From IMG/VR virus record IMGVR_UViG_3300038361_000164, positions 124,001-188,000 of that record: 64,000 nt of DNA. One strand, 5' to 3'. The position numbers were made by a program, and so were the translations under genes. The notes beneath the pieces are model-generated. The model was not told where the DNA came from. It worked only from the letters and a program-made list of their open reading frames with translations, and searched no databases. Positions 2,459-63,365 of this stretch are shown one piece after another (position 1 is the first letter of the stretch; each line of letters begins with the position of its first letter).

Positions 2459-2479
2459 TTTTGTTCCTTTTATTTGTTG

Positions 2480-2563: not shown

Positions 2564-2564
2564 A

Positions 2565-3667: not shown

Positions 3668-3691
3668 GTTATGCCTTTCTGATTTTATTTG

Positions 3692-3764: not shown

Positions 3765-3790
3765 AGAATGGGCGGAATTCCGCCCGGAAT

Positions 3791-3955: not shown

Positions 3956-3965
3956 TATTTTCCTT

Positions 3966-4822: not shown

Positions 4823-4838
4823 ATTTGATTCCTGTAAA

Positions 4839-4913
4839 TGGTAGCGCATAGGAGAGTCGAACTCCTGTACCCAGACTGAAAACCTGGTGTCCTAGCCATT
4901 AGACGAATGCGCC
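4839..4913 (-). tRNA. tRNA-Glu(TTC)
   Basis: CCAGG-TT-TTC-AG-TCTGG; encoded CCA. Confidence 0.95.
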
Positions 4914-4918
4914 ATTAA

Positions 4919-5191
4919 TTAGATGTCTTCTAAAAATAGTTCTGTGAAACATGGAGTATTTTCCCCCACATAAGAACCTAAGGTATTAAACTCGAAAAAT
5001 TCTTGTGCTTCCTCTTCTGTCATACCGTCGCGTACCATAAGTATCTCGATGCACTTAAAAGTATTGTATAAAGCCACTGTATTCATACCACATCTAGATA
5101 CTGTTCCTATTAAGGCTTCGTCGAACCCGTCGGCAAATAGCATGTCTTCGTTATATTCAGCTGCTTTTAATTTTAGTGGATGTTCATCCAT
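4919..5191 (-). CDS. Conserved phage hypothetical protein
   Basis: ADGFDEALIG...DGMTEEEAQEFFEFN..GSYVGENTP, a pattern common in phage ORFs. Confidence 0.6.
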   Translation of the reverse strand: MDEHPLKLKAAEYNEDMLFADGFDEALIGTVSRCGMNTVALYNTFKCIEILMVRDGMTEEEAQEFFEFNTLGSYVGENTPCFTELFLEDI

Positions 5192-5574
5192 GTCAAGTCC
5201 TTTATTATTAGTGTGTTAGTGGAGGCTACGGAGAACGATTCCGTCTGTTTTTTTCCGTGCAAAAGAAATGACCACCCCATTGCAGTCCCAACCCCCGTAA
5301 GTTTATATTGTTTGTTCTGTTGTCGGCGTTTGTTCTTGTTCTTTTTCTGTTGGTGACGCGTCATACGTGGCGCCTAGCGCATATATGTAAAGGATCCAAA
5401 TAACTGCAGCCCAAGTTAAACATATGGTACCGTAGTGTTTTGCTCTTTTGCCTTTGTAGCTAGTTTTTAGTGATAATACTAAAAAACCAAACCCTGCTAT
5501 AGTTAATACAATTATTGGAATTGCGAGAATACCTATAAACATATTATTTCCTTTCTTTTTATTTTTCTTGTTTG

Positions 5575-5649
5575 CAGTACGCACGGGATTCGAACCCGTC
5601 TATATTCACTGTGACAGAGTGACGTCTACACCTAGCAGACTCGCGCACT
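5575..5649 (-). tRNA. tRNA-Asp(GTC)
   Basis: TCACT-CT-GTC-AC-AGTGA; G73. Confidence 0.92.
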
Positions 5650-5686
5650 ATTGAATCCTAAAAATGTTGCTTAAGTAACATAAGTG

Positions 5687-5715
5687 TTGACTTTCGACTC
5701 TCTGTTTTATATATT
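5687..5715 (+). promoter_or_regulatory. Sigma70-like promoter for HNH gene
   Basis: TTGACT-N17-TATATT; ATG at 5721. Confidence 0.7.
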
Positions 5716-5720
5716 AAACC

Positions 5721-6221
5721 ATGAAAGTAAAATGTAAACAATGCACCAAAGAATTTGATAAAAGACCTAGTCAAATTAAAAGGACTAAAAATAATTTTTG
5801 TACACATAGTTGTGCAGCAATTTATAATAATCGAAAACATCCAAAACGAGTAGCAATATGTCTTTGCATAGTTTGTGGGTATAAAATAAGCCGTCAAAAT
5901 GCACATTGTCATGTTTGTAGAAGAAAAAAAGCTTTATCTTCTTTTAATGATGCTACAATTCAAGAAAAATTATATCATAAAAAAGGTCCTTGGAAATATA
6001 ATCCTATACGGCGTCGTGCAAAATCTGTGTTAGAACTTGAAAACCGTCCTAAAATTTGTGAAGACTGTGGTTGGGAGTCGCACGTGGAAATAGCGCATAT
6101 TCAACCAATTTCTACTTTTCCTTTAACTACCAAAATTGCCGAAGTTAATGCACCGACTAATTTGAAGTATTTGTGTCCCAATTGCCATTGGCTTTTAGAC
6201 CATTCAACTACTAAATTATAA
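5721..6221 (+). CDS. HNH endonuclease (homing-type) inserted antisense in tRNA array
   Basis: CxxC pairs; CEDCGW...EIAHI...NL..LCPNCHWLLD. Confidence 0.9.
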   Translation: MKVKCKQCTKEFDKRPSQIKRTKNNFCTHSCAAIYNNRKHPKRVAICLCIVCGYKISRQNAHCHVCRRKKALSSFNDATIQEKLYHKKGPWKYNPIRRRAKSVLELENRPKICEDCGWESHVEIAHIQPISTFPLTTKIAEVNAPTNLKYLCPNCHWLLDHSTTKL

Positions 6222-6377
6222 TTTCATTTTTAAAAATATAAGTAGTGTGTTATTACACCAAAGGGATGCAGTTTCTTTCACCTGTCACTCAGTTTATAAA
6301 CTCTGATCCTCGAACTTTAGTTCTCTCCCCACTCTTTAAAAGATGGGTACCGCTAATCCAACTTCCTACTTATAATT

Positions 6378-6450
6378 TGGCCGCAGGTGTGGGTTACTAC
6401 ACCACATTTCCCTCCTCAATGGAGGGGTCCTAGATTTAAACGAACCTGCG
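6378..6450 (-). pseudogene. Degenerate tRNA-like element (TTG anticodon-like loop)
   Basis: Perfect acceptor CGCAGGT/ACCTGCG, G73, CCA; abnormal T-loop and position 33. Confidence 0.65.
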
Positions 6451-6455
6451 TTAAT

Positions 6456-6525
6456 TGGCGGAGGAGTACAGGATCTTGAACCTGCGCAATCTGCTTTGGA
6501 AGGCAGACCTCCGGAGAACTCCCCC
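6456..6525 (-). pseudogene. Degenerate tRNA-like element (8-nt anticodon loop CTTCCAAA, reduced D-arm)
   Basis: Acceptor GGGGGAG/CTCCTCC, G73, CCA; T-arm GCAGG-TTCAAGAT-CCTGT. Confidence 0.65.
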
Positions 6526-6531
6526 TCTAAT

Positions 6532-6585
6532 TGGTCGCTCCCCTTCCCGTGCGCTATAATCACACAGTTGACGTCAGAGGAGCAA
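6532..6585 (-). pseudogene. Mini tRNA-like element (about 54 nt)
   Basis: TTGCTCCTC/GGGGAGCGA stem followed by CCA; one internal 5-bp/7-nt hairpin. Confidence 0.5.
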
Positions 6586-6591
6586 ACGTTA

Positions 6592-6689
6592 TGGCAGTTA
6601 GGGTAGGACTTGAACCTACATTTGCTACTAATCGCCAATGGTTTGCACCACCCGTTTTCACATATCCTAGTCTATTGGACGACCTAACT
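6592..6689 (-). pseudogene. Degenerate tRNA-like element (Ser-like, expanded centre)
   Basis: Acceptor AGTTAGG/CCTAACT, G73, CCA; T-arm GTAGG-TTCAAGT-CCTAC; no regular anticodon arm. Confidence 0.65.
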
Positions 6690-6695
6690 ATTATT

Positions 6696-6941
6696 TTACG
6701 AAATATTGTGTTGAGCTAATTTACGAAGAACAAATTTTTTTAATGCTCCAGGATTTTTATTTTTATCTTCGCCGATTATATGTAGAGCAATTTTCATCTC
6801 TTTGCCGGCGTGTCCTGGTTTACCTAATATGTATCTTACAACTCTTCCTGCTTTGTTAAACTCTCGTCTTTCGCGATCTGAATAACGTTTGCATTTTACT
6901 TTGTCTCTTCCTTTTTTACTGGATTTTGCTTTTTGTGCCAT
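6696..6941 (-). CDS. Small basic hypothetical protein
   Basis: ORF track; AGGAG upstream. Confidence 0.55.
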   Translation of the reverse strand: MAQKAKSSKKGRDKVKCKRYSDRERREFNKAGRVVRYILGKPGHAGKEMKIALHIIGEDKNKNPGALKKFVLRKLAQHNIS

Positions 6942-6972
6942 TATGCACTCCTTGTTAATAAGTTATTGTTTG

Positions 6973-7047
6973 AGCGAATAGTGGAAGTCGAATCCACGAA
7001 CCTTAACTTTGGCAAAGTTACGCTCTGACCAGCTGAGCTATATTCGC
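6973..7047 (-). tRNA. tRNA-Gly(GCC)
   Basis: TAACT-TT-GCC-AA-AGTTA; U73. Confidence 0.95.
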
Positions 7048-7054
7048 ATTATTG

Positions 7055-7126
7055 AGCAACTAGAGGGAATCGAACCCTCATCGTCTGGGTGGAAGCCAGA
7101 AATCTTAGCCATTGGACCACAGTCGC
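7055..7126 (-). tRNA. tRNA-Gly(TCC)
   Basis: TCTGG-CT-TCC-AC-CCAGA; U73. Confidence 0.95.
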
Positions 7127-10823: not shown

Positions 10824-11588
10824 TTATATCTCTAAGGAGATACTTACTTGTTGAGATTTTCCACCTGTGAGTAGTGCCTGACTAGAGGAACTAACACTTC
10901 TGGAAATAAACCCAATTATTTTGGCAATGCTCGATTCGTCGGCAGTTTCAATGTCGATAAATTGAACGATTCCACTTTCTTTTTGAAAGTCTTCTAGTGC
11001 TTTGCGATAGGCATTAATGTTAACTCCAATTAGAACTACATTAATTTCTTCCAAAGCTTCCTCATCTGCCATTAACGCATTTACTGCGTCCTTTACTTCT
11101 GAGGCATTTCGAATGATGTGGGAATAGTTTTCAGATCCATCTGTTATTACAAAAATAAGCCCGTTGACGGTAAATTCTTTTTTCCATAATTTAGAACCGA
11201 AAGCATGCATTGATTTAACAGATTGAAATGTAGCATCATAAAGAGGAGTTCCTCCGCCGCAGCGTGGAACTGGATACTGGCTTTCATCAATATCTGCCAA
11301 TAAGTCATATCCATGGTCTTCGACAATACCATTGCTGTTGAAAGATGTATTTCGAATTAATAGATTATCGACTCTTGGAGACTTTTTCAGAGCTTTTATA
11401 ACTTCCTGTTGTATTCGTTGAAGCTCAGTAGCATATCCATATACAGATCCGGAAATGTCTTTTACTATTTCCACAATAGTATACTGATCCGTTCCTGTCA
11501 GCTTTTCCAATTCCACGTGTGAAAACTTAAGGTTTCCAGGTCCTGGTATTTTAAAGCTCTTGTTGTTGTGTGGTGTGTAACGTGGCAT
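10824..11588 (-). CDS. vWA-domain protein (TerY/YegL-like)
   Basis: DISGS MIDAS, GGGTPLYDA, FVITDG. Confidence 0.88.
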   Translation of the reverse strand: MPRYTPHNNKSFKIPGPGNLKFSHVELEKLTGTDQYTIVEIVKDISGSVYGYATELQRIQQEVIKALKKSPRVDNLLIRNTSFNSNGIVEDHGYDLLADIDESQYPVPRCGGGTPLYDATFQSVKSMHAFGSKLWKKEFTVNGLIFVITDGSENYSHIIRNASEVKDAVNALMADEEALEEINVVLIGVNINAYRKALEDFQKESGIVQFIDIETADESSIAKIIGFISRSVSSSSQALLTGGKSQQVSISLEI

Positions 11589-11600
11589 ATTATATCCTTT

Positions 11601-12431
11601 CTAAAATAAATCGGGAATGTTTGCAGCGGGAATGACTTGCATACCCTTAGCTTTCATGTTTTTGATAGCTTCGACACCTGCATCTTCAAAGCCGCCTACT
11701 GGAGAGGAAGTTCCCTCAACCAAGTACAGTTTCTTGATGTCCTCTTTAGAGAAGTAGTCGGCTACATCTCCAAGAGTAAACGCCCAGCAATGACTTAACG
11801 CCTCACCTGATGAAAGAATTATATCTACCTCAGGATTAGAGAGCATGTCCAGGAATTTGTTATTAAGATTAGTCGTTTCGTCATCATCTCGAATAACTTC
11901 AGCTTTTACAGCGGAATAATGCTCTGTGAAAGGATTGTGACCTTTCTGTACGTAATTGACACGTGCATTGTTTTTGACTTCCCACTCTTGAAGAGTATCC
12001 CAAAGTGGTTTATACACATTGTGACCCCATGATCCGAATAGACAATGGTAAGGCCATATAAATAAACTGAATTTTCCTTGCTCTTCCAGTTTTTGTGTAT
12101 ACTCTTCTAACCAATCTTGATGTACTGGATGAAACGCTTTCCAAGTTCCATTCATAACCTCGTCATGTGAAATTGCAGTAAATACCGGAGGCATGTTACC
12201 TTTTTTATCTCTTATAAACATTGGATGAAAAATAGCCAATCTTTGGTGTGTATCCATTGTTACGTGAATATCCTCAAACTCGTGTCCCCATTTTTGTACT
12301 ATAGAGGCCACCGTATCCATGTCTTTTGTGGCTCCAGGCACAGGCAAGGCTGAGTCTGGTAAATCCATAAAATCTTGTTGTGGATCTATCATAAGATAGT
12401 GGATGTTTTTATTTGTTATCTGTTTGTTCAT
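11601..12431 (-). CDS. pncA: Nicotinamidase / isochorismatase-family hydrolase
   Basis: IDPQQDF, DTH, WPYHC...GH, KG...EHYSA, GEALSHC. Confidence 0.85.
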   Translation of the reverse strand: MNKQITNKNIHYLMIDPQQDFMDLPDSALPVPGATKDMDTVASIVQKWGHEFEDIHVTMDTHQRLAIFHPMFIRDKKGNMPPVFTAISHDEVMNGTWKAFHPVHQDWLEEYTQKLEEQGKFSLFIWPYHCLFGSWGHNVYKPLWDTLQEWEVKNNARVNYVQKGHNPFTEHYSAVKAEVIRDDDETTNLNNKFLDMLSNPEVDIILSSGEALSHCWAFTLGDVADYFSKEDIKKLYLVEGTSSPVGGFEDAGVEAIKNMKAKGMQVIPAANIPDLF

Positions 12432-12432
12432 T

Positions 12433-12990
12433 TTATTCCTTTTCTTGTTTTCTTAAGTCACCCGGATTGGGTTGATGTACTTGAATGCCTACTTCGTTTC
12501 TCCACATGTCGACAACCTCATTGTCATCTTCATATACTAAAAAGGCATCATATTTTCCTTTTACATGTTGTTCATATAATTCTTTTTTAATTACAGCACT
12601 ACTTCTGTGATCATTAGTTGCTCGCATAATTAAATTTCCAGTCCATAAATTATATTTATCTATATAATCTTGTGTAAGTTCATAGAACTCACATCCACGC
12701 ATAGTCATGTAAATAATATCTTTACCTGCCTGTTTCCAAAGAGATAATAGTACCATTAGTTGTATATTTGGTAAATCCAAATCACATTCTGACGGGTCAA
12801 ATGGATCCCTATTACCTGGGTGAAATAAGGTTCCATCCAAATCGCAGATGATTGCTATAGGAAGTTTATGATTTCTTTTCCATTGGGGCCATATCTCTGG
12901 ATATGTGTGTAAGAATTCATTTGGGGGTGTTATTGTAATATAGGGCTTGGGTTTTTGCACCCAGTCTATTATAGCTTTAAAGTTGAACAT
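12433..12990 (-). CDS. HAD-family phosphatase (Pnkp phosphatase-like)
   Basis: CDLDGTL, MR...DHRSSAVIKKE, EDD..VVDMWR. Confidence 0.8.
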   Translation of the reverse strand: MFNFKAIIDWVQKPKPYITITPPNEFLHTYPEIWPQWKRNHKLPIAIICDLDGTLFHPGNRDPFDPSECDLDLPNIQLMVLLSLWKQAGKDIIYMTMRGCEFYELTQDYIDKYNLWTGNLIMRATNDHRSSAVIKKELYEQHVKGKYDAFLVYEDDNEVVDMWRNEVGIQVHQPNPGDLRKQEKE

Positions 12991-53486: not shown

Positions 53487-53536
53487 TCTTTATCTTCCTT
53501 TCTTTTTTTTTGATAATTAAGATTTGATTACATACT

Positions 53537-53547
53537 ATTCTTATACC
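53537..53547 (-). promoter_or_regulatory. GGTATAAGAAT motif (copy 10)
   Basis: Exact motif after terminator-like hairpin at about 53558-53590. Confidence 0.7.
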
Positions 53548-53599
53548 AATTTTAAGCTAAAAAAAGAGAAGGGGGTCCGTCTCTTTTTCCTTACTACTA

Positions 53600-54745
53600 A
53601 AAATAGAAAAGAATTTACATTTAGTTGAGGTTTACACGAAAGATAGACTCGGCACTTCGTAGAAGGGCTGAACAATCTTTCTTGTTTACGTCAAGTATAT
53701 GCAAATTCAATTGCCATTCTGTGAATTCTCTATACCTAGAGAGTTCTTGTTTCGTTCAGATATTCCCATACCTGCGTATGCGTAGCACATGCGTTTAAAC
53801 GAATCTAGTAAAATTAAATGTTTGGGCTTTTTACTACAAAGCGGCAAGAGATGTTTAAACCTTGGTTTACTCATCTTGATTTGCCAAGTAATTAGTTGGA
53901 ACCCAGGCACGTAACGTACCTGTAGACATAGTCTAGTAAAAAGTTTGGATAGTTATTTATCACTAAAGAAGTACGGTTTCGAATAGTATACCCTACGTAT
54001 TATGGTTTGGCTGGATACTTGCGGGTTAAGACGAGCTTATTGTGGGACCGCAGTCCCATTCAAGCGCTGTCTTATCCGGCGCTAAGTAGTCGGTCGAAAC
54101 ATAATACACTTGGTATACTAAGTGGAACCTGGTTCTCTCGAACATACTCTATGTTCTTTGTTTAAGTCTGTTAGTTTACAGACTTCCATATGCGAAACGC
54201 ATCTGTTAAACGGTCTAATAAATAAGTTGGTTTTCCTTCACTACTAAAGGTCGAAGAAGCTTCTCTTATTCGCGGCTATTTACATTTCATCCTTCTGAGA
54301 GTACTTCACCGTAGAGACACTTCGTAAAAGTTAATCCTTGAATAACTTTGCGGAGGGTTTCCTGAAGTAGGATCAGAAGGGTACAATGAAACGGAAATAG
54401 GGGTGAATTCGTTGGGACCAGAGGAGATTCGAGATCTTTGGATGGAGACCATATCGAATAAAGGAATAATCGTTCGGACATGCTGTTCGACCGTTTACCG
54501 ATGTTGGAGTTCCGGCATTAAGATTTAAGGCTGGAACGACCTAACCCGGTAAATGGTTCGGGACAGTGTCTGAATGTTATACCATATTTTGATATGCGGA
54601 AATAAGTAAACAGTAGCCTTACGCGGTTGTTTACGGTTTCCTTGTCTGGAGTTATTAACGAAAAAGAAATAAGTCAATAACGATCAAATGCGAAACGCAT
54701 CTGTGAGAATTCTAGTAAAGGTGAGTCCGTAGGTGAAACGGACTC
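53600..54745. ncRNA. Candidate large structured ncRNA (about 1.1 kb)
   Basis: No credible ORF; many hairpins; 17-bp direct repeat at 54190-54206 and 54688-54704; strand ambiguous. Confidence 0.5.
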
Positions 54746-54782
54746 TAAAAGAAAGGAATATAACATGAGGTCATATTACATA

Positions 54783-54793
54783 ATTCTTATACC
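54783..54793 (-). promoter_or_regulatory. GGTATAAGAAT motif (copy 11)
   Basis: Exact motif. Confidence 0.7.
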
Positions 54794-54809
54794 CTATAAT
54801 ATTTTTTTA

Positions 54810-55340
54810 GTTGGTAAGCTCGAAGGTGAATCGAGCTATTTGTTACCAAACCCATTATAAGGAGAGCTGTAAACTAAGCAATACCCAAATTCTCGATATT
54901 ACTTCTCTGTTACAGGGATGAATGAAAGGTTGTCTGTCACGATCCGCTAAGATCATAACTATAGGATTCCATTAACTGGAGCCTGCCCATTATCCCGGGC
55001 CAGTTACTTTATTTGTGGAAAGTATAAACCTGTGGGTTGAATCTCACCTATGAGCAGTTAATTGACAAATACTCGATTCAGAACGACAAGCGTTCAAAGC
55101 AGAAGCGTAGAGCAGGAAGATAGAGAGATGGACTCTACGCCATGGATATTCGTCCGAAGACAAATATCGTAAATCAATCTCGGAGGGCTAAGTATGTGTG
55201 GCCACACAATATAAGCAATCTCCGAGTATTAAAGACACTGTCGTACCGAGACTCGAACTCGGGAAGGACTCAAAGTCCCACTGTCCGCTTAATTTGTACT
55301 CCAGGGCGATCAGGACCTGGCCACGCAGTTCTTTAATAAG
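54810..55340 (-). ncRNA. Candidate structured ncRNA (about 530 nt) with 5' tRNA-like domain
   Basis: CCGAG-TTCGAGT-CTCGG T-arm; C(UUCG)G tetraloop on minus strand; many 7-8 bp stems; promoter motif copy 12 upstream. Confidence 0.55.
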
Positions 55341-55369
55341 TTTAAATCTTTAGTAATCTCTTACTCATC

Positions 55370-55380
55370 ATTCTTATACC
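55370..55380 (-). promoter_or_regulatory. GGTATAAGAAT motif (copy 12), divergent from plus-strand block
   Basis: Exact motif. Confidence 0.7.
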
Positions 55381-55400
55381 AATTTTTGATAAAATAATCC

Positions 55401-55429
55401 TTTACACTTACACGGGAGTATTATATATT
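55401..55429 (+). promoter_or_regulatory. Sigma70-like promoter
   Basis: TTTACA-N17-TATATT; ATG at 55436. Confidence 0.65.
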
Positions 55430-55435
55430 AACAAT

Positions 55436-55735
55436 ATGGACAAATCTACATATGTTTTCGAAAAGCTGGCGAATAAACTAAACAATAAACCACAATGAGT
55501 TAAGGACCTTGTTCCTGGAGCTGCATCTGGAGTGGTCACTAGTTTAATGTTTCACCCATTAGATACGTTACAAGTGTTGAGACAAACAGAGAAAAAAATG
55601 CCTAACGTAACTTTAAAAAGATTGTATAAAGGGGTAGGATTAAAATTGTTAAAGCAAGTACCTACTATGGCAGTAGGCTACGGTGTGTACGGTGCTACAA
55701 AACGATATGTGGAAAATAAGTCTTCGGTTACTTAA
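55436..55735 (+). CDS. Single-repeat mitochondrial-carrier (Solcar)-like protein with DK..Y.FEKLA leader, TGA(55496)=Trp
   Basis: W.KDLVPGAASGVVTSLMFHPLDTLQVLRQ...LYKGVGLKLLKQVPTMAVGYGVYGATKRYV. Confidence 0.7.
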
Positions 55736-55783
55736 TATATAATACAACAAAAAAGTTTTAAAAAAACATTATCAATAAAACTC

Positions 55784-55812
55784 TTTGCGTGTATACATAG
55801 ATTGTGTATATT
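55784..55812 (+). promoter_or_regulatory. Sigma70-like promoter
   Basis: TTTGCG-N17-TATATT. Confidence 0.5.
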
Positions 55813-55895
55813 AAAGAACACAAGTAGAAAAATTATACCTGAGCTGCTTCAGGGGTTTTAAGCAGTAATTAAACTAAATAATGGAGATCATTATA

Positions 55896-56369
55896 ATGGA
55901 CAAAGCAGAATTAATAATGGAAAAGATCGCCGCAGGTGGACATTTTAGAGCAGCTGGCAGCTCAATATACAAAGGCGTAAGAAGTGCAGCAGGCACAGCT
56001 AGAGGTCAAGTATCCAAAGGTTGGGCAGGCATCAAAGGTGGAGCTACTGTAGGTAAAGCCAAAGCAATGGAATACGCTGGATCAGCAAAAGCAAAAGCAG
56101 GAAAAGCTTACAGCAAAGGCAAAGATAAAGCAACAGCGGCTTATGAAAAAGCTAAAACTAAAGTTAAGGGAACAAAAGCTGCAAAGGATATTGGTGTAAT
56201 GAAAGCACATAATAAAACAAGTAAATCCTATAAAGGTGCAAGAAAACGTACTGCAATTCGTGCAGGAGTTGTTGGAGCGGGAGCTATTGCGTCCGGTGGA
56301 GCTGCATATGCATTATCTAAGAAAGCAGAACTTGCATTAGAAAAATTAGCTGAAGCATATCTTTCATAA
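55896..56369 (+). CDS. Lys/Ala-rich (histone H1-like) basic protein with leader and C-terminal copy of leader motif
   Basis: MDKAELIMEKIA...KKAELALEKLA; GGAG upstream of ATG 55896. Confidence 0.75.
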   Translation: MDKAELIMEKIAAGGHFRAAGSSIYKGVRSAAGTARGQVSKGWAGIKGGATVGKAKAMEYAGSAKAKAGKAYSKGKDKATAAYEKAKTKVKGTKAAKDIGVMKAHNKTSKSYKGARKRTAIRAGVVGAGAIASGGAAYALSKKAELALEKLAEAYLS

Positions 56370-56386
56370 ATAAATAAATCAATAGT

Positions 56387-57706
56387 ATGGCAATCGGAAT
56401 TCCGGATATCAAAATGTTTCGGGCTTTTCCGACTGTAAACAGTCCTCAAAAGGGAACTTTTAATATACAACTACATGAAGCGGATCGTGCAGGAAGACAT
56501 TACGACATTCGTATTGTTCTTCCTGGATCTTCTCATGCGTATTCCTGAGCTGCCAGAAAACTCCCAACATCTGGACAGAAGGTAATGGCCATCGAACAAC
56601 CAACTCACACGGAAAGCTATGTGGGTTGGTCTGGTACTATATCAAAAGGATATGGGAAAGGGACAGTGCGCTCAATTGTTAAAGAGCCAATCGAAGTCCT
56701 AGAAGCTACAGTAAATAAAGTTGTTTTTAACATATACACAGGAAACTCGGCAACTCGCTATCTACTAAAAAGAACTGGTGCGAAAGAATGGTTATGATAT
56801 AACTATACTCTTACCACAGATAATACCGCAATACCTACCAAAAAACCTTCCTATAAAGAAATAGAGTTCTCAGCCCTTACAACTCTAAATAAAGAAGAAG
56901 TACATTCTCCTAAATTAGACGGAGCACATAATATAATTCGATTGCGACCAGAAAAACGGATAGATATTTATTCTTATAGAAAAAGTAAAAAAGGAAAAGA
57001 GAGAATAGATCATACATATAAAACAGATTTGTATAAAATAAGATCGCCAAAAGAATTTGGTGACTCGGTTATTAGAGGTGAATTATATGTTCCCGGAAAA
57101 ACTTCTACGGAAACTGGATCTATTTTAAACTCGAACGTATGAAAAGCTAGAAAGAAACAACAAGAATCAAACAACTCTTTAGATATTAGGATTTATAATA
57201 TTGACACTTACAAAGGAAAAGATGTAAGCAAGAAACCTTATAGAGAAAAACTTTTAATGTTACAAGAGATTAGTCGTCGAATTCCTCAACTTAAAATGAT
57301 GGAATTAGCGCGTACACAAGGCGAAAAGTTAAAACTAATAGACCAGATCAAACACAAAAAACATAAGGAAACGGAGGAGGGAATTGTTGTATTTAATCTC
57401 AATAACCCTACACCTGTCAAAGCTAAAATAGCATCAGACTATGATGTGCTTATTACAGGAACATTTCCAGCAAAGCCTGGAACTAAATATCACGGAAACG
57501 CTATCGGCGGTTTTTTGGGACGACCAGAGAACAGTAACATTATTATTAGAATAGGTAGCGGCTTAACAGATCAGATTAGAAGAAGTGCTTATACTAATCC
57601 TGAAAAATACGCAGGACAGTGAGCAAAAGTAAAAGCTAACTCTAAATTAAAGAGTGGCAAATACCGTCATCCAAGATTTATTGAATGACGTTATGAAAAA
57701 TTTTAA
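56387..57706 (+). CDS. LigD-type 3'-phosphoesterase fused to ATP-dependent DNA ligase (439 aa; five TGA=Trp)
   Basis: H.....HYDIR, S*A (SWA), H...Y, GYGKG; ligase KLDG, RGELY, EEGIVV, GSG, RHPRFIE*R. Confidence 0.88.
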
Positions 57707-57719
57707 AGGAGAAAATACA

Positions 57720-58301
57720 ATGGACAAAGCAGAATTTATATTTGAAAAGATTGCAGTAAGTGGCAAACTCTTTGGCAAAGCATTAAAAAGTAGAGTAAAA
57801 GATGTTCGTAAAGCCTATAAAACTGATTACAGTAAGGGATCTAAATTACACGAAAAAACCTTAAATCAAACACAAGGACGTACTATACGAAAAGGATTGA
57901 AAAAAATTCATAAAAAATCAGGTGGAAAAGGAAAAAACTATTATGGATCTAAAACCGAAAGAGCTATGACAGAAGTACATAGCAGAGTTTTAACTACTCC
58001 TAAAATGAAATATTTTTCACCCACTAAATCTCAAAATATGTACAATAAATCTATGAGTAAGAAAGCAGCTGTAAGTACTAAATTCCGAAATATGAGTAAG
58101 CTAGCCGTTTTAGGGCTTGCCGCAAAAGCTTTTGCAAAGGTTACTAGACGTGTTAGTGCTTTAAAAAATTTAAAAAAACCAGCAGTTAGAGCAAGGGTGT
58201 ATAAACACATAAAAACTAAAAACCCTTTATCTTCGACAGCAAAGTTTAAAAGTATGAAAAAAATACAACGACTTGGAGATGCCCCAAAGTTTGATATTTA
58301 A
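57720..58301 (+). CDS. Highly basic protein with leader
   Basis: MDKAEFIFEKIA; AGGAG upstream. Confidence 0.75.
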   Translation: MDKAEFIFEKIAVSGKLFGKALKSRVKDVRKAYKTDYSKGSKLHEKTLNQTQGRTIRKGLKKIHKKSGGKGKNYYGSKTERAMTEVHSRVLTTPKMKYFSPTKSQNMYNKSMSKKAAVSTKFRNMSKLAVLGLAAKAFAKVTRRVSALKNLKKPAVRARVYKHIKTKNPLSSTAKFKSMKKIQRLGDAPKFDI

Positions 58302-58928
58302 ATGGAATATAAACACCACGCATTAAAAACTTCAGTAGTAGGATTATCTGGCGCAGCCGATATTTTAATACCAGGACCTGTAGAAACTATACTTGCTGGG
58401 GCCTTGGCTCCAAAGGGTAAAAAGGTTAGAGCAAGCACTCTAGCCACAGCGGATTCAACTATAGGTTCTGTTCCTGGCTATACTGCGTTGGCTATTGCTA
58501 GTAAAGCTCCATTAAAAAAATGATTCAAGAAACAAGAAGGATTTAAAAGTGGAGTGAAAAATGCTTTTAGCTCTTTACGAAAACTTAAAGCGAAACAACT
58601 TTATAAAACATATAAAGGACCTCTTGCTTTATTAGGAATAGGAAGTGCTTTAGGAAGTGCGTATGGATATAATCGTGCTATAAAACAAGCAGAGTATGAC
58701 CCAACTTTAGAACGACAACTTCCTGGCTGAGATAATCATCTTCTCCAAGGAAGAAAAAGACTTCTCAATACTTCTAAGAAGCTATCAAGTGAATCTATTC
58801 GCGCGTTAGGTGACGAATGAATTTTTAGAAAACCACCTAAGGGCGTGCGTAAATTTGGATACACAGGACATATCTCTAAAAAAGCAGAAACAGTGTTCAA
58901 TAAAGTAAAGGAATGGCATAATGAATAA
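58302..58928 (+). CDS. Basic protein with Gly-rich hydrophobic segments (208 aa; three TGA=Trp)
   Basis: Frame open through TGA 58521, 58728, 58818 to TAA 58926-58928. Confidence 0.7.
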
Positions 58929-59988
58929 ATCAGAATATATTTTCACTAAAATTGCAAAAGAAAAATTAATGGATCTTTGAGCCAAACAAAATGTGCCAAT
59001 AGGCATGACAACCAAACAATGAAATGATGATTATAATTCTCAATGATATGATTATAGTGCAAAAAAGAAATCTACAGGTAGTAAATCTTTAATGGCTTTT
59101 GATAAAGAATATCGTTCTATGCATAAATATAACTTCACTGCAGCAGATCAAAAAAAATATGTAAGTCAATCGAGAAAACGAGCATTACTTACTGTAGGCA
59201 CTTTAGGTGCTGTAGGTGCTTTAGGAGGCTATTTGGTGACTAAAAAATTTAAAAAATTTGCCACAATAGGATCCACAAGAGGTGCAGCAATAGGAGCGGC
59301 AACCCTTGGAGGATTATCTGCCCTTTCGCAAGGAGCGCATGTACGCGGATCTTTTAAAGATTGACAAAAAAGTAATAAAAATAAATCTTTTAAAGCATAT
59401 ACAAAATCAGAACGTGGAAAAGGAACTATAAATCCTGCTTTAAAAGAAGTGGGGAGTAATTTTATGTGAGGAGGCTTATCTGGGGCTTACTTAGGTACTG
59501 GGTTTAGAAGAGCAACAAGTTATAAAGGCTATAAAGGCTATAAAGGCTATAAAGCTTCTACACATTCAGTAGATAGCTTATTAAAAACTTTTGGAGGAAC
59601 TAAAGGACAGTTCAAGACTAAAAAAGATGTAAACATGGCTTGAAGAAGTGCGGCTAAAAAATATCATCCAGATAGAAATCCAGGCAATATAAAAGCCGAA
59701 GCTAAAATGAAAAATATAAACAATGCGTATACAGAAGTAAAAACAACTGACTGGTTTAGCAAGCTTGCCGCGTTATATAAAGTAAGTGGGTCCATGGGTC
59801 AGAAAAGGTTAAATAGATTAGGAGGGCACACAGTTAAACAACTTCAGGCGCTAACCAAAGCAATGAAGGCCGGAAAATTGACTCCTAAGGAAGGAGGAGC
59901 TTTACATGCGAAGATAATGAGAAAACTTCATCCGACACTTCAAAAAATAAATTATAAACTTCAAAAAGGAATAGATAAACTTCCATAA
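58921..59988 (+). CDS. Leader + glycine-zipper + J-domain protein (355 aa; six TGA=Trp)
   Basis: MNKSEYIFTKIA; A*RSAAKKYHPDRNPGN..AEAKMKNINNAY (HPD motif). Confidence 0.82.
59521..59556 (+). repeat. (TATAAAGGC)3 tandem repeat encoding YKGYKGYKGYKA
   Basis: Directly visible, in frame, upstream of the J-domain. Confidence 0.9.
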
Positions 59989-59993
59989 TAACA

Positions 59994-61394
59994 ATGGATA
60001 AGGCCCTTTTCATATTTGAAAAATTAGCAGCTGACCAGTCGCATCAAGCTAGAGTTCTAAAAAAGCTTGAAAAGACTAATAGGCTTTTGCTATACCATGG
60101 ATTGGGTTCAGGAAAAACGTACACAGCGCTTCGAGCAGGTGAGAAATTTAAACAACATATCACAGCAGTAGGTCCAGCAGCGCTTAAAGGCAACTTTCCT
60201 AAAGAGAAGCAGAAACATAACATAAAAGGCACCTTAAAATATTTTTCATATAATAAGCCTCCTACAAAGGACGTGTCTAAAAATATAGTAGTATTTGACG
60301 AAGCACACAGAATGGGTAGAGTGGAATCACAGCGTTCACATTATCCAGATAAAATAAAAGGTAGCAAAACATTGTTCTTAACAGGAACACCAATTAGAAA
60401 TGAACCAGCGGAATTAATACCTATTTTAAGAGGATTAGATATTCCAGTTGGAAGAGATAAAAAAAGATTTAATCAGGCATTTGTTCAAGAAATAAGACAA
60501 AAACCTGGATTCTTTGCTAGAGTATTTAAAGGGGTAAAACCAGGAACAATTAAGCGAGGCAAAAATTTAGGCATACTATCAAGAGCACTAAAAGGCAAGG
60601 TGGATTATCATGCTCCACAGACAAATAAAGATTATCCCTCAGTTAAAACTCAGCGAATCGAAACTGTTATGTCAGAGCGACAACAATCTACCTATAACAT
60701 GGTAATGAAAGAACATGCCGATTTGCGCTATAAAATTAGACACGGTATTGCGCCGTCTAAAACAGAGTCATCTCGTATGAATGCGTTTTTAACAGCAGCC
60801 AGACAGGTATCCAATCGTCCGGGCAAATATAATTTAAGCGCTACAGAAGCTGACGCGCCCAAGATAAACGCCGCATTCGACGAAATAAAGAGACGCCACA
60901 AAAAGAACAAAAGATATAGAGGTGTAACATACTCCACATATCTTGGGCACGGTATCGACCCAATGGCTAAAAGATTGAGTAGAACTAAGATCCCATTTGC
61001 ATCTTTCACAGGTAGACTTAATGATAAGGAAAAATCTAATATTATTAAAAAGTATAATACTGGAAAAATTAAACACCTACTTATTTCTGGCGCAGGCGCA
61101 GAAGGTTTAGATTTAAAAGGCACAAGATTATTACAGATAATGGAACCTCACTGGAACGAGCCGATGTTAAAACAAATTAAGGGTAGAGTGAAACGATTTA
61201 AATCTCATACACATTTACCGAAAAAAGAGCGCAATATAACAATTCAGACGTATATTAATAAACCACGTAAAACACGTTGGTTGAAAAAACAGCATAGCGG
61301 TACAGATGAATATCTAGAACTACTATCTAAAAACAAACAAAATCTTGTAAGCGATTTTACTAACGTATTAAAGAGGGTTGGAAGTGCAAAGTAA
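59994..61394 (+). CDS. SNF2-like superfamily 2 helicase with leader
   Basis: MDKALFIFEKLA; GLGSGKT, DEAH, TGTP, GAEGLDL, QIKGRVKR. Confidence 0.88.
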   Translation: MDKALFIFEKLAADQSHQARVLKKLEKTNRLLLYHGLGSGKTYTALRAGEKFKQHITAVGPAALKGNFPKEKQKHNIKGTLKYFSYNKPPTKDVSKNIVVFDEAHRMGRVESQRSHYPDKIKGSKTLFLTGTPIRNEPAELIPILRGLDIPVGRDKKRFNQAFVQEIRQKPGFFARVFKGVKPGTIKRGKNLGILSRALKGKVDYHAPQTNKDYPSVKTQRIETVMSERQQSTYNMVMKEHADLRYKIRHGIAPSKTESSRMNAFLTAARQVSNRPGKYNLSATEADAPKINAAFDEIKRRHKKNKRYRGVTYSTYLGHGIDPMAKRLSRTKIPFASFTGRLNDKEKSNIIKKYNTGKIKHLLISGAGAEGLDLKGTRLLQIMEPHWNEPMLKQIKGRVKRFKSHTHLPKKERNITIQTYINKPRKTRWLKKQHSGTDEYLELLSKNKQNLVSDFTNVLKRVGSAK

Positions 61395-61905
61395 AGCAGA
61401 AATATTATTTGAGAAATTAGCCACTAAATTGGGTTTTATGAGGAAGGGGTTTTTTTCCCACACAACAAGTAGAAGCGCTTTATCGAATATTCTATCTTCA
61501 GGTAAAATAAAAACAGGCAGATCATTAGGAAAAGCAGGACAAGGTTTTAGAAACATGGATGATATGGTTCCTGACAGTTTTAATGAGTATGTAAGTACTG
61601 GAAAAAATACTATCTATACCTCTGGAAAAAGATTTAGAGCTATATTAATGAAATCTCCGAAAAATGAAGTAAGTAATTTAGGAAAAGAATCTTTACTTAA
61701 AGGAGATGTCGCATTAAGTTTAAAAAATACACGAGTCGCAGTACCAGCTAACAGACTTTCAGGTTACCAAAAAAAGTATCCTAAGTATAAATTTATAGCA
61801 TCTGAAGATATAAAAACTAAAAGAATAACAAAGTACCAACCAAATAAAGAAGTACAGGAAGGTATCAACTGGGGTGAATTAAACCAAGCATTTGGTAATT
61901 ATTAA
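61384..61905 (+). CDS. Basic protein with leader; possible ADP-ribosyltransferase fold
   Basis: (V)QSKAEILFEKLA; FSHTTS..AL..ILSSGKI resembles the HxT/IL..G strand of DarT/Tpt1-like ARTs. Confidence 0.6.
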   Translation: MQSKAEILFEKLATKLGFMRKGFFSHTTSRSALSNILSSGKIKTGRSLGKAGQGFRNMDDMVPDSFNEYVSTGKNTIYTSGKRFRAILMKSPKNEVSNLGKESLLKGDVALSLKNTRVAVPANRLSGYQKKYPKYKFIASEDIKTKRITKYQPNKEVQEGINWGELNQAFGNY

Positions 61906-61912
61906 AATAGAT

Positions 61913-62851
61913 ATGGCAGATAACCCTTCAATAGTAGATCATTTTAGATACGGTAAGCGTCTTGTTAGACACAAGTATTTCATGCTTGGCCCAGGAAGAC
62001 AGTTAGGGGTGCCATACAGCACACTTCTTGCCCACGACCTGTCAAAGTTTAGACCAAGTGAATGGGGCTCTTATGTGAAGTATTGGCACGGTCCAAAAGG
62101 TATAACTGGGACAAGAGATCCAGAAGTATATAGAAAATTTAGAGAAGCGGCATCGCTTCACTACAAACGAAATCCACATCACGGTCATAAGATCAACGTG
62201 GAACAAAAGCGTAAGCATCAATTAGAAGCAGTAACAGATTGGTATGCAACAACGAAAGCGAATCAGCCTAGTGCTAAAAACTTTCCTAGCTTTGGCACAT
62301 GGGTCAGAAAACATAATTCGACTGCTAGAAAGAAATTAATGGAACTAGGAGTAGACACGGAGAAATTAGCAATGCAAGATAAAGCAACATACGTATTTGA
62401 GAAGCTAGCAGGAGCCAAATGATCGCCCCTTTCACCATATAAATTTAATAAGTTTATACGTAATCGTTTTGGAGAGAAGCTTCTGCTAAAGTCATTTGAA
62501 ACTTCTAACAAACTTTGACCTCAGGATGTTAATACTTTACATGCCTATAAAACTTTTAAACGTATGGTAGCAGATGTTAATAATGTTAGAACGATTAAAG
62601 ATGCTAGAAAAGTAAATAAAACTTGATCAGACAATGTATGAAGGAAAAATCAAGACTTGGTAGCCCCAGGAAGAAGAAACAGCATAGAAGAGGTATTAAT
62701 GGAAAGAACATTAATTACTCCTCTCGGGAAGAAAGAAGGCTTACCTATTAATAGGAATGTATTAACAACGAAGTTAGAGAAAAACATACCCTCTAAACTT
62801 CAGAAACAATCTTTAAGACTTATATTTAATAATAAATATAGTAAAAATTAA
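61913..62851 (+). CDS. DUF5662-like HD domain fused to a second leader-bearing domain (four TGA=Trp)
   Basis: HK...HDLSK...E...H..RNPHH...DW; internal EKLAMQDKATYVFEKLA; open through TGA 62420, 62516, 62624, 62639. Confidence 0.7.
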
Positions 62852-62867
62852 ATAAAGGACTATAACA

Positions 62868-63365
62868 ATGAAAGATAAAGCACAAATAATATTTGAAAAG
62901 ATAGCGAAGAAGGATATAATATCCTATTTACCGTTTACTAAAAAAAGACGTCAGAAAAACAGGGAAGCTTGGGTAAGAGAAACTCCTAAAGGTAAGAATT
63001 TTTCACGTAAAGTATTAGTGGCATATGTAGCAAAACACATGCGAAAAGGGGGGAGAAAAGTAGCAATTCACCCTAAAAACCGCCTAACTGTGCAACAAGT
63101 ACGAGCTGCAAAACGTTCAGGCTCTCATTATAGCCAAGGAAGTTATAAACATGCAAGTAAAAAACAAGCAGCATACAGTAGTTTGAAAAAAGTAAAAGGA
63201 ATAGGATTGCCCGAATTAGACAAGTTAGTTAGCAAGATTAATATAACAAGTAAAAAATATTCCAAGGAAGGCAAAAAACTAATACCATTGCTAAATCGTA
63301 AAAACAAGGCCTCAGTTAATAGAATTAGAATGCGTAAGAATTTAGAAAAACGTTACCAAAAATAA
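62868..63365 (+). CDS. Highly basic protein with leader
   Basis: MKDKAQIIFEKIA; AAGGA upstream. Confidence 0.75.
   Translation: MKDKAQIIFEKIAKKDIISYLPFTKKRRQKNREAWVRETPKGKNFSRKVLVAYVAKHMRKGGRKVAIHPKNRLTVQQVRAAKRSGSHYSQGSYKHASKKQAAYSSLKKVKGIGLPELDKLVSKINITSKKYSKEGKKLIPLLNRKNKASVNRIRMRKNLEKRYQK

What the first reader, a model, noticed from the sequence alone, without database searches (positions are those of the whole stretch)
55436..55735. Single-repeat mitochondrial-carrier-like protein in a bacteriophage
Seen only after TGA read-through: a 99-aa protein made of the leader plus W.KDLVPGAASGVVTSLMFHPLDTLQVLRQ...LYKGVGLKLLKQVPTMAVGYGVYGATKRYV. Established: SLC25/Solcar repeats have Gxxx(G)...PxD/ExxK/RxxxQ in the odd helix and Y/F-K/R-G before the even helix. 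They occur as three tandem repeats in eukaryotes and rarely elsewhere (Mimivirus, Legionella LncP). Inference: a one-repeat, two-helix unit that could homotrimerise into a carrier. It may be a relic of the pre-triplication ancestor, or a virion-delivered membrane transporter or pore.
Basis: partly seen in the sequence, partly recalled or inferred. Interest (0 to 1): 0.8.

Follow-up and report, generated by a model that had tools for sequence, protein, structure and literature searches.

The report
Single-repeat mitochondrial-carrier homologue in marine phages
A large marine bacteriophage encodes a 99-residue protein that is one third of a mitochondrial transporter, a stand-alone unit the papers read here do not report, so the old idea that these transporters arose by tripling one unit can now be tested at the bench.

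Summary
Window 55436-55735 (+) is a real 99-codon gene with one in-frame TGA (55496-55498). That TGA is read as Trp: in the neighbouring ligase, 3 of 4 TGAs align with W in an orthologue. Counting TGA as Trp also restores a normal Trp frequency in this strand block.

The part after the TGA hits Pfam Mito_carr (E 1.8e-9, 37.6 bits, cut-off 22.3). A family profile hits only SLC25 carriers in the PDB, on all three of their repeats.

About nine sequence clusters of 92-161 aa single-repeat proteins exist. Those whose context was fetched lie on phage-like metagenome contigs. Three diverged phages keep the gene in the same neighbourhood, and orthologues have no stop at the TGA site. No second repeat lies nearby.

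The family keeps GxxxG, P-x-D, the glutamine brace, Y-K-G and a basic contact-point residue. It has Gln or Ala (8 Q, 1 A of 9) where carriers have the salt-bridge Lys/Arg.

Its N-terminal 12-residue leader is shared by at least seven neighbouring proteins, just upstream of the terminase.

Best reading: a membrane hairpin that homo-oligomerises, probably as a trimer, into a weakly gated carrier-like assembly. The leader may be a head-targeting tag. Trimer, substrate and packaging are all untested.

The parts
55366..55380 (+). Promoter-like motif CATCATTCTTATACC, 56 nt upstream of the ATG
   Evidence: The pattern CATNNTTCTTATACC occurs 8 times in the window, all on the + strand, against 0.18 expected. 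The same motif lies upstream of the carrier gene in L006 and L008. Its function is inferred.
55414..55418 (+). Shine-Dalgarno-like GGGAG, 17 nt before the ATG
   Evidence: Read directly from the sequence. The spacing is long, so the assignment is weak.
55436..55735 (+). Gene for the 99-aa single-repeat Mito_carr protein (stop TAA at 55733-55735)
   Evidence: A metatranscriptome contig covers 55454-55631 at 100% identity.
55436..55474 (+). N-terminal leader M-D-K-S-T-Y-V-F-E-K-L-A-N (shared tag)
   Evidence: The motif [DKN]K[AGS]xx[VILF][FM]x[KG][LIYEF][AGSI] occurs 7 times in the window and 0 times in 50 shuffles. It is modelled as a separate helix, residues 3-14 of the orthologue P0002.
55496..55498 (+). 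In-frame TGA read as Trp (codon 21)
   Evidence: Ligase TGAs align with W in L008 at 3 of 4 sites. A J-domain and a ligase domain span TGAs. The block has 20 TGA and 14 TGG. A public ENA gene call (P0258) on near-identical DNA (L011) prints W at this TGA.
55517..55531 (+). GxxxG (G-A-A-S-G) of the odd helix
   Evidence: Invariant in all family members. The motif definition is from PMC6700394.
55556..55585 (+). Signature P-L-D-T-L-Q-V-L-R-Q: proline kink, acidic residue and glutamine brace, with Gln in place of the salt-bridge K/R
   Evidence: The motif Px[DE]xx[RK]xxxQ is from PMC12410006.
55625..55633 (+). Y-K-G, the [WYF][KR]G motif before the even helix
   Evidence: Present in 9 of 9 members. 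The motif is from PMC13385207.
55652..55657 (+). K-Q at the contact-point position of the even helix
   Evidence: [quoted passage not shown] K/R is present in 9 of 9 members.
55688..55702 (+). Y-G-A-T-K, a degenerate [YF][DE]xx[KR] cytoplasmic-network motif (the acidic residue is missing)
   Evidence: The motif is complete in only 2 of 9 family members.
55881..56369 (+). Next gene: a basic K/A/G-rich 162-aa protein with the same leader (at 55896) and a leader-like C-terminus
57720..58301 (+). Leader-tagged 193-aa protein
58921..59988 (+). Leader-tagged J-domain protein with 6 in-frame TGAs
59994..61394 (+). Leader-tagged SNF2-type helicase
   Evidence: Homologues in cultured phages align only from residue 15 onward.
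62868..63365 (+). Leader-tagged 165-aa protein. A further leader copy lies at 62378, inside or after the DUF5662 ORF

Best explanation
SHOWN.
- The gene is real and conserved.
- Its TGA is decoded as Trp, as in the other genes of this + strand block.
- Its product is a genuine homologue of one SLC25/mitochondrial-carrier repeat: odd helix, short loop, even helix.
- It belongs to a small family of single-repeat proteins. Those whose context was fetched lie on phage-like marine metagenome contigs.
- There is one copy per locus and no second or third repeat nearby.

INFERRED.
- The hairpin is too polar to sit alone in a membrane. Its even helix carries two Lys and a Gln.
- It keeps residues that in carriers work only between domains or during gating: the acidic residue of P-x-D, the glutamine brace, the aromatic brace, GxxxG and a basic contact-point residue.
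- The most likely mechanism is therefore homo-oligomerisation, most simply three copies around a three-fold axis. That would rebuild a six-helix carrier-like barrel in the host cytoplasmic membrane, with the strongly positive loop on the cytoplasmic side.
- Such a trimer would have a fully symmetric cavity with a ring of three Lys/Arg. This suits a small symmetric anion (phosphate-like) or a leak.
- Both salt-bridge networks are degenerate (Gln for Lys/Arg on the matrix side; the acidic residue is missing on the other side). The gates should be weak, so the protein is more likely a uniporter or channel than a strict exchanger.

MORE SPECULATIVE.
- The 12-residue N-terminal leader is shared with at least seven otherwise unrelated proteins encoded just upstream of the terminase and of a protein with a head-maturation-protease-like region.
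- It may work like the T4 capsid-targeting sequence. These proteins would then be loaded into the prohead and released into the cell with the DNA.
For: Homology:
- PF00153 at E 1.8e-9, above the cut-off.
- The family profile hits only SLC25 carriers in the PDB, on all three repeats, best E 6.5e-13.
- 689 library hits; the listed best 150 are overwhelmingly multi-repeat carrier-type proteins.

Real gene:
- Orthologues at 42-59% identity in L006 and L008 share synteny: carrier, ligase, SNF2 helicase, DnaJ, DUF5662.
- A metatranscriptome contig lies over the gene, while the ORF-free stretch upstream has none.

TGA = Trp.

Single repeat: the HMM scan of six-frame translations finds one domain per locus.

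Motifs:
- GxxxG 9/9, acidic residue 9/9, glutamine brace 9/9, Y-[KR]-G 9/9, K/R at the contact point 9/9.
- K/R at +3 of the signature is 0/9, against 529/585 repeats of three-repeat carriers.

Other features:
- Only the first half of helix 1 exceeds a hydropathy of 1.0. The loop has net charge +5.
- Secondary structure of both AF2 models of the orthologue P0002: leader helix, long helix, short helix, long helix.

Leader:
- 7 copies in the window, 10 in L008, 0 in shuffles. The upstream DNA is not conserved and codons differ at synonymous sites.
- It is absent from helicase homologues in cultured phages.
- Terminase and a protease-like protein follow the module.
- T4 IPII and IPIII share a 10-aa N-terminal tag (PMC3012670, PMC10229621).
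Against: - No oligomer could be modelled.
- Foldseek with the low-confidence model put UCP1 and the ADP/ATP carrier first, but at E of about 2. With the better model (pLDDT 82.5) no carrier was retrieved at all.
- The salt-bridge base is missing and the loop is shorter than the canonical 20-30 residues with no [DE]G. A classical alternating-access cycle is therefore not assured.
- The residue after [VIL]-F in the leader is E in most copies but N, M or T in some. A T4-like cleavage site is not conserved.
- No virion proteome exists, and no tRNA(UCA) was found in the roughly 100 kb examined.
- A two-helix membrane protein as capsid cargo has no direct precedent known to me.
Confidence: 0.5

Rival explanations
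1. A small late membrane protein that perturbs the membrane, in the manner of a holin, pinholin or depolarising factor. It would use the two helices only as a hairpin, with no carrier-type cavity or substrate.
For: It is small and has two helices with charged termini. It lies in the TGA-recoded strand block next to the head genes, and recoding is linked to late and lytic genes (10.1101/2021.08.26.457843). GxxxG-type motifs also drive holin oligomerisation (my own knowledge). Both salt-bridge networks are degenerate.
Against: The helices are only weakly hydrophobic and the second carries K, K and Q, unlike typical holin transmembrane domains. Conservation follows the carrier signature position by position: P-x-D, Q brace, Y-K-G and contact-point K/R. 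No endolysin or spanin was seen next to it.
Confidence: 0.18
2. A subunit or anchor of a hetero-oligomeric membrane complex formed with the other leader-tagged proteins of the module, several of which have glycine-zipper membrane segments. The carrier repeat would be reused as a packing module, not as a transporter.
For: Neighbouring tagged proteins carry Gly/Ala-rich hydrophobic segments (window 55881-56369; L008 3021-3980; L019 758-979). The tag is shared and partly genome-specific: L006 has H-V-F-x-K-Y-A on both carrier and helicase.
Against: The tag is also on soluble enzymes, the SNF2 helicase and the J-domain protein. In L017 the carrier sits in a different neighbourhood. The conserved cavity-type residues are not explained.
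Confidence: 0.15
3. Not a functional gene: a chance ORF, a decaying fragment of a three-repeat carrier, or an ORF that ends at the TGA and restarts inside.
For: Standard gene callers give only a 62-aa product (P0001). No tRNA(UCA) was found.
Against: There are nine diverged clusters with the same architecture and synteny. Homology is unbroken across the TGA. Orthologues have no stop there. TGA equals Trp in neighbouring genes. No repeat remnants lie in the window or flanks.
Confidence: 0.02
4. Origin rival. The family was captured from a eukaryote or giant virus and cut down to one repeat. It did not descend from the pre-triplication ancestor.
For: The family is narrow: about nine clusters among 5.8 billion, and none found in 185,579 prokaryotic genomes. 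The best three-repeat matches are about 220-aa mini-carriers with equally short (about 73-aa) repeats, from giant-virus MAGs of the same kind of habitat. The profile scores repeat 1 best, 33.5 against 25 bits.
Against: The phage clade (SH-aLRT 97) is not nested in any repeat clade. The universal Gln at the K/R position is not seen in the sampled carriers. The hits were selected by similarity to the phage protein, which biases the comparison.
Confidence: 0.6

Closest known systems
Eukaryotic SLC25 / mitochondrial carrier family (ADP/ATP carrier, UCP1/2, GTP/GDP carrier; PF00153)
   Same: Significant profile similarity to each of their three repeats. Shared features: GxxxG, proline kink with acidic residue, glutamine brace, [WYF][KR]G, a basic contact-point residue, and the helix / short helix / helix order.
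   Different: One repeat per chain instead of three. Gln or Ala (8 Q, 1 A of 9) replaces the salt-bridge Lys/Arg. The cytoplasmic network is mostly incomplete. The loop is shorter and lacks [DE]G. The protein carries an extra N-terminal leader and is encoded by a bacteriophage.
Giant-virus mini-carriers (the Mimivirus VMC1/L276 type; the GVMAG and L007 proteins found here)
   Same: Viral, with short repeats of about 73 residues. They are the best three-repeat matches to the phage protein.
   Different: Three repeats in one chain, and K/R is kept in the signature in about 90% of repeats. They come from viruses of eukaryotes. The nucleotide transport by VMC1 is from the literature as I recall it (Monne et al. 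2007, cited in PMC13385207).
Legionella LncP and Lpg1137
   Same: Carrier homologues encoded outside eukaryotes (PMC13385207, PMC5621508).
   Different: As I recall, they are full-length three-repeat proteins injected into a eukaryotic host and aimed at its mitochondria. The phage protein is a single repeat and its host is presumably a bacterium.
SemiSWEET-type half-transporters (bacterial single units of a eukaryotic internally repeated transporter)
   Same: A conceptual precedent: a prokaryote-side single unit that oligomerises into the architecture that eukaryotes encode in one chain (my own knowledge; the structure paper is listed in PMC12410006).
   Different: An unrelated fold that forms a dimer, and its oligomer has been demonstrated. 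Here oligomerisation is only inferred.
T4 capsid-targeting sequence of internal proteins IPII and IPIII
   Same: A short N-terminal peptide shared by otherwise unrelated proteins. Both are amphipathic with a hydrophobic-x-E core (T4 F-I-A-E; here I-F-E or V-F-E). The genes lie near head genes (PMC3012670, PMC10229621).
   Different: No sequence homology is shown. The E is not invariant here. Copies also occur internally and at C-termini. Packaging and cleavage are untested.

Membership tests
SLC25 / mitochondrial carrier family (PF00153, PS50920) | Profile match to the carrier repeat above the curated threshold | tested here: met
   37.6 bits against a cut-off of 22.3, E 1.8e-9. PF00153 is precomputed for all orthologues. 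In the PDB only carriers are hit.
SLC25 / mitochondrial carrier family (PF00153, PS50920) | Three tandem repeats of about 100 residues in one chain (six transmembrane helices) | tested here: not met
   One repeat of about 75 residues plus the leader. The HMM scan of all six frames finds a single domain per locus.
SLC25 / mitochondrial carrier family (PF00153, PS50920) | [quoted passage not shown] | tested here: not met
   P and D/E are present in 9/9. The K/R position is Q in 8/9 and A in 1/9, against K/R in 529/585 carrier repeats.
SLC25 / mitochondrial carrier family (PF00153, PS50920) | Glutamine brace (the Q of Px[DE]xx[RK]xxxQ) | tested here: met
   9/9.
SLC25 / mitochondrial carrier family (PF00153, PS50920) | [DE]Gxxxx[WYF][KR]G before the even helix, 20-30 residues after the first motif | tested here: inconclusive
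   Y-[KR]-G is present in 9/9. In the window protein the spacer is 14 residues and no [DE]G is present.
SLC25 / mitochondrial carrier family (PF00153, PS50920) | [YF][DE]xx[KR] cytoplasmic network on the even helix | tested here: not met
   The window has Y-G-A-T-K. The motif is complete only in P0035 and P0015, 2 of 9.
SLC25 / mitochondrial carrier family (PF00153, PS50920) | GxxxG on the odd helix | tested here: met
   Invariant G28 and G32.
SLC25 / mitochondrial carrier family (PF00153, PS50920) | Six-helix barrel with a central cavity (here it would need a homotrimer) and solute transport | not testable with these tools
   Only monomer prediction was available. The monomer models gave no significant Foldseek match.
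T4-type capsid-targeting sequence cargo | Short N-terminal peptide shared by unrelated proteins | tested here: met
   7 copies in the window, 10 in L008, 0 in shuffles.
T4-type capsid-targeting sequence cargo | Conserved protease site (hydrophobic-x-E) at the end of the tag, and a prohead protease | tested here: inconclusive
   E is present in 6 of 7 window copies, but N, M or T occurs in relatives. A 576-aa protein downstream has weak similarity to a head maturation protease (phrog_18299, 4e-6).
T4-type capsid-targeting sequence cargo | Presence in proheads or virions and removal of the tag | not testable with these tools
   No cultured phage or virion proteome exists. Searches of the phage collection with 24 kb of window DNA (megablast) and with the orthologue P0002 (tblastn) found nothing.
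Holins / pinholins | Strongly hydrophobic transmembrane domains and a lysis cassette nearby | tested here: not met
   Only residues 24-42 exceed a hydropathy of 1.0, and helix 2 carries K, K and Q. No endolysin was found among the neighbours scanned.
Stop-codon-recoded phages (TGA to Trp, code 4, in late genes) | In-frame TGA in conserved genes, aligned with Trp in relatives and confined to one gene class | tested here: met
   The terminase ORF holds 14 TGAs.
Stop-codon-recoded phages (TGA to Trp, code 4, in late genes) | Phage-encoded suppressor tRNA(UCA) | tested here: inconclusive
   About 28 tRNAs were seen, including tRNA(CUA) and tRNA-Trp(CCA), but no UCA anticodon in the roughly 100 kb examined of a 210-kb genome.

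The most novel reading that the evidence does not exclude
These phage proteins are living representatives of the single-repeat state from which the three-repeat mitochondrial carrier arose. They would work as fully symmetric homotrimeric carriers, so the SLC25 fold would have a root in prokaryotic viruses rather than being a eukaryotic invention. The tree does not exclude this: the phage clade lies outside the R1, R2 and R3 clades on an unresolved backbone.
Probability: 0.1. Interest if true: 0.95.

Novelty: new variant of a known kind. Interest (0 to 1): 0.8.

Why it matters
Mitochondrial carriers are thought to have arisen by triplication of a gene for one 100-residue repeat. [quoted passage not shown] That ancestral state has no extant example in the papers read here.

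A natural, conserved, stand-alone repeat gives a direct experimental handle on three questions:
- Does one repeat self-assemble into a three-fold barrel?
- What can a perfectly symmetric binding site carry?
- How much gating survives without the salt-bridge networks?

It would also be the first carrier-type protein reported from a bacteriophage, in the literature searched here. It comes with a second unexplained feature: a 12-residue tag shared by a whole gene module next to the head genes. That tag may mark a set of packaged, injected proteins in an uncultured clade of large marine phages that also recode TGA.

Tried and rejected
Searches that found nothing:
- Megablast of 24 kb of the window against 50,697 phage records: no match.
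- tblastn of P0002 against the same records: no match.
- PHROGs for the carrier piece: nothing.
- Word-index search with the 78-aa piece: only the window's own product.
- Scan of 185,579 prokaryotic genomes: no relative (the first attempt failed for lack of a conserved stretch).
- Metagenome and IMG/VR scans added only the two phages already known, plus giant-virus MAGs.
- Homologue search with the tagged 193-aa neighbour: only itself.
- Literature: no paper on a phage or single-repeat carrier in four full-text searches.

Structure:
- Shallow-alignment model, pLDDT 57: UCP1 and the ADP/ATP carrier came first but at E of about 2.
- Deeper alignment, pLDDT 82.5: no carrier was retrieved. I treat the fold search as uninformative for an isolated hairpin, not as evidence for or against.

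Phylogeny of single repeats: the backbone is unresolved.

Recoding:
- Hunt for a tRNA(UCA): not found. One look-up was lost to a coordinate slip.
- TAG read-through was considered because of the tRNA(CUA). Only one suggestive in-frame ORF pair turned up, and it was not pursued.

The ORF-free stretch upstream:
- Rfam on the 1.9-kb stretch: only sub-threshold chance hits.
- Repeat remnants of a decayed three-repeat gene in that stretch or downstream: none.

Full report
**1. What is in the sequence**

Window 55436-55735 (+) runs from an ATG to a TAA and holds 99 sense codons if the one in-frame TGA (55496-55498, codon 21) is read. Standard-code ORF lists show only a 20-codon ORF before the TGA and a 67-codon GTG-started ORF after it. 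Public gene callers give a 62-aa product, P0001.

The first start codon after the TGA is GTG at 55532. It would remove the G-A-A-S-G segment, which is invariant in all relatives.

**2. The replicon and its code**

The window is part of a phage genome.
- It carries T4-type RNA ligase and polynucleotide kinase, an SNF2 helicase and eight tRNAs.
- The longest contig holding the gene is 210,263 bp and is listed in IMG/VR.
- Flanks fetched from public contigs add 20 more tRNAs and, downstream, a terminase large subunit and a protein with a head-maturation-protease-like region.
- All runs that hold the DNA are seawater or marine metagenomes.

TGA is a sense codon in the + strand block that starts with this gene.
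- An ATP-dependent ligase domain and a J-domain are each split by TGAs and continue in frame.
- In the ligase, three of four TGAs align with Trp in the orthologue of contig L008, and the fourth with Phe.
- The block at 55-64 kb has 20 TGA and 14 TGG in 2,743 codons. Together these give 1.24% Trp, against 1.55% (TGG only) in the minus-strand genes, where TGA appears only at or near ORF ends.
- The terminase ORF holds 14 TGAs.

This is the pattern described for stop-codon-recoded phages with recoding in late genes (10.1101/2021.08.26.457843). No tRNA(UCA) was found in the roughly 100 kb examined. A tRNA(CUA) and a tRNA-Trp(CCA) were found.

**3. Identity of the protein**

- The 78-aa piece after the TGA matches Pfam Mito_carr at E 1.8e-9, 37.6 bits, against a cut-off of 22.3.
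- An exhaustive HMMER search gave 689 hits at E up to 1e-3. The listed best 150 are overwhelmingly multi-repeat carrier-type proteins.
- A profile of the phage family finds only SLC25 carriers in the PDB (GTP/GDP carrier, UCP2, UCP1, ADP/ATP carriers) and aligns to each of their three repeats, best E 6.5e-13.
- 97 of the 100 nearest ESM-Atlas clusters are Mito_carr.
- With table 4, the family HMM matches the window as one domain that runs from the leader through the TGA to the end, at 119 bits. No other repeat was found in the 64-kb window or in the flanks of relatives.

It is therefore neither a fragment of a three-repeat gene nor one of three adjacent single-repeat genes.

**4. The family**

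Nine sequence clusters of 92-161 aa share the architecture 'leader, one repeat': P0258/P0001, P0002, P0013, P0018, P0035, P0015, P0021, P0025 and P0040.
- P0002 (59% identity) and P0018 lie in phage contigs with the same gene order as the window: carrier, then ligase, SNF2 helicase, J-domain protein and DUF5662.
- These orthologues have L, I or A where the window has TGA.
- Nothing similar was found in 185,579 prokaryotic genomes, and no record of the annotated phage collection holds it.
- Metatranscriptome contigs cover 55454-55631 and the neighbouring genes. They do not cover the 1.75-kb ORF-free stretch upstream. This is weak evidence for transcription, because depths are low.

**5. Which carrier features are kept**

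Motif definitions are taken from PMC12410006, PMC6700394 and PMC13385207.

Kept in 9 of 9 members:
- GxxxG on the odd helix.
- The proline kink with its acidic residue.
- The glutamine brace.
- Y-[KR]-G.
[quoted passage not shown] These are the contact-point positions.

Lost:
- The Lys/Arg of Px[DE]xx[KR] is Gln in 8 members and Ala in 1. It is K/R in 529 of 585 repeats of the three-repeat carriers sampled.
- The cytoplasmic [YF][DE]xx[KR] motif is complete in only 2 of 9 members.
- The loop of the window protein is 14 residues, without [DE]G.

In carriers the acidic residue, the glutamine brace and the aromatic brace act between domains, and GxxxG matters only in the matrix-open state (PMC6700394). 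Their conservation in a one-domain protein is the main argument that copies assemble around an axis and that some gating motion is kept.

The hairpin is also poorly hydrophobic. Only residues 24-42 exceed 1.0 in a 15-residue window, and helix 2 carries K, K and Q. The loop has net charge +5. That fits a cytoplasmic loop and a buried polar face.

**6. Structure**

Only monomers could be predicted, and both models are of the orthologue P0002. Both show a leader helix (3-14), a long helix (21-52), a short helix (about 70-80) and a long helix (84-113). Mean pLDDT was 57 with nine relatives and 82.5 when single repeats of carriers were added to the alignment.

Foldseek put UCP1 and the ADP/ATP carrier first for the poor model, at E of about 2. 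It found no carrier for the better model. I count this as inconclusive. The trimer remains an inference.

**7. The leader**

The first 12 residues fit a motif that occurs seven times in the window. All copies are on the + strand between 55.4 and 62.9 kb, and none appeared in 50 shuffles.

The motif heads six genes:
- the carrier;
- a basic K/A/G-rich protein;
- a 193-aa protein;
- the J-domain protein;
- the SNF2 helicase;
- a 165-aa protein.

A seventh copy lies inside or after the DUF5662 ORF.

L008 has ten copies, some of them internal. L006 has three and L019 one more. The DNA upstream is not conserved and codons differ at synonymous sites, so the constraint is on the peptide.

Helicase homologues in cultured phages align only from residue 15 onward. 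In Pseudanabaena phage PA-SR01 that helicase sits beside the major capsid gene.

The closest analogy is the T4 capsid-targeting sequence. This 10-aa N-terminal tag is the only feature shared by diverse internal proteins, and it is removed by the prohead protease (PMC3012670, PMC10229621). The analogy rests on position, shared-tag logic, a hydrophobic-x-E core and the adjacency to the terminase and protease-like genes. Packaging is untested.

**8. Regulation**

A 15-nt motif, CAT-N-N-TTCTTATACC, occurs eight times in the window, always on the + strand, against 0.18 expected. One copy lies 56 nt upstream of the carrier ATG. The same motif precedes the carrier gene in L006 and L008. It is probably a class-specific promoter. 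That function is inferred.

**9. Origin**

In a tree of 84 single repeats from 28 carriers plus the nine phage proteins, the phage proteins form one clade (SH-aLRT 97). The clade sits on an unresolved backbone, outside the R1, R2 and R3 clades. The phage profile scores repeat 1 best, 33.5 against about 25 bits.

The best three-repeat matches are about 220-aa mini-carriers with 73-aa repeats. They lie in giant-virus MAGs and in giant-virus-like contexts.

Given the narrow distribution, capture and reduction is the more economical origin, at about 0.6. A pre-triplication relic is not excluded, at about 0.1.

**10. Verdict**

- The identification as a single SLC25-type repeat in a phage is supported.
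- The homotrimeric carrier, its substrate, virion delivery and the relic hypothesis remain untested inferences.
- By the strict family definition it is not a member, because it has one repeat and no salt-bridge base. It is a homologue of the repeat and plausibly works like a weakly gated, symmetric version of a carrier.
- No paper found in the library describes such a protein.

Noticed in passing
window 55436-63365 (+); L008 900-8600; L006 6001 and 9893; L019 758: A 12-residue N-terminal tag (consensus M-D-K-A-x-x-[IV]-F-E-K-[LI]-A) is shared by at least seven otherwise unrelated proteins of one module. They include an SNF2 helicase and a J-domain protein. Some copies are internal or C-terminal. 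The DNA upstream is not conserved.
   Followed up: partly
window 53490-55400: A 1.9-kb stretch with no ORF over 93 codons in any frame, even with TGA as sense. There is no Rfam hit and no metatranscriptome contig on it, although both flanks are covered. It holds a tRNA-like T-arm on the minus strand near 55240-55270 that ARAGORN does not call. It is absent from the related phages L006 and L008.
   Followed up: partly
L015 14315-16061: A second stretch of about 1.7 kb without called genes in the same genome. It shares one 70-nt match at 71% identity with the window's ORF-free stretch, in the opposite orientation (E 7e-5).
   Followed up: no
window 1479-7126; L014 4337-20183; L015 10615-19122: A dispersed array of about 28 tRNA genes. 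It includes a tRNA with anticodon CUA (an amber suppressor, labelled Pyl by ARAGORN) and tRNA-Trp(CCA). No tRNA(UCA) was seen, although TGA is read as Trp.
   Followed up: partly
window 13244, 34492, 34937, 35409, 41616, 52610, 54779, 55366 (+): The promoter-like motif CATNNTTCTTATACC occurs eight times, all on the + strand (0.18 expected). It is conserved upstream of the carrier gene in two related phages.
   Followed up: partly
window 10824-12452 (-): Two ORFs of 283 and 258 codons lie in one frame, separated by a single TAG. Given the tRNA(CUA), this may be a read-through fusion or simple adjacency.
   Followed up: no
L014 9005-11828 and 17005-17493: NAD-related genes (NAPRTase, NADAR, a nucleoside deoxyribosyltransferase-like gene) are interspersed with the tRNA array.
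   Followed up: no
L017 187-1574: In one diverged relative (P0025) the single-repeat carrier gene directly follows an actin-like gene (Pfam Volactin). Its leader is a variant, M-L-I-K-L-G-F-D-K.
   Followed up: no
L007; L027-L030: Marine giant-virus MAGs encode about 220-aa three-repeat mini-carriers with about 73-aa repeats. These are the closest three-repeat relatives of the phage protein.
   Followed up: partly
window 56387-57706 (+): A fusion of a region that reads like a LigD 3'-phosphoesterase domain (recognised by eye, no Pfam hit) with an ATP-dependent DNA ligase (weak Pfam hit, below cut-off). It has five in-frame TGAs, read as Trp.
   Followed up: partly
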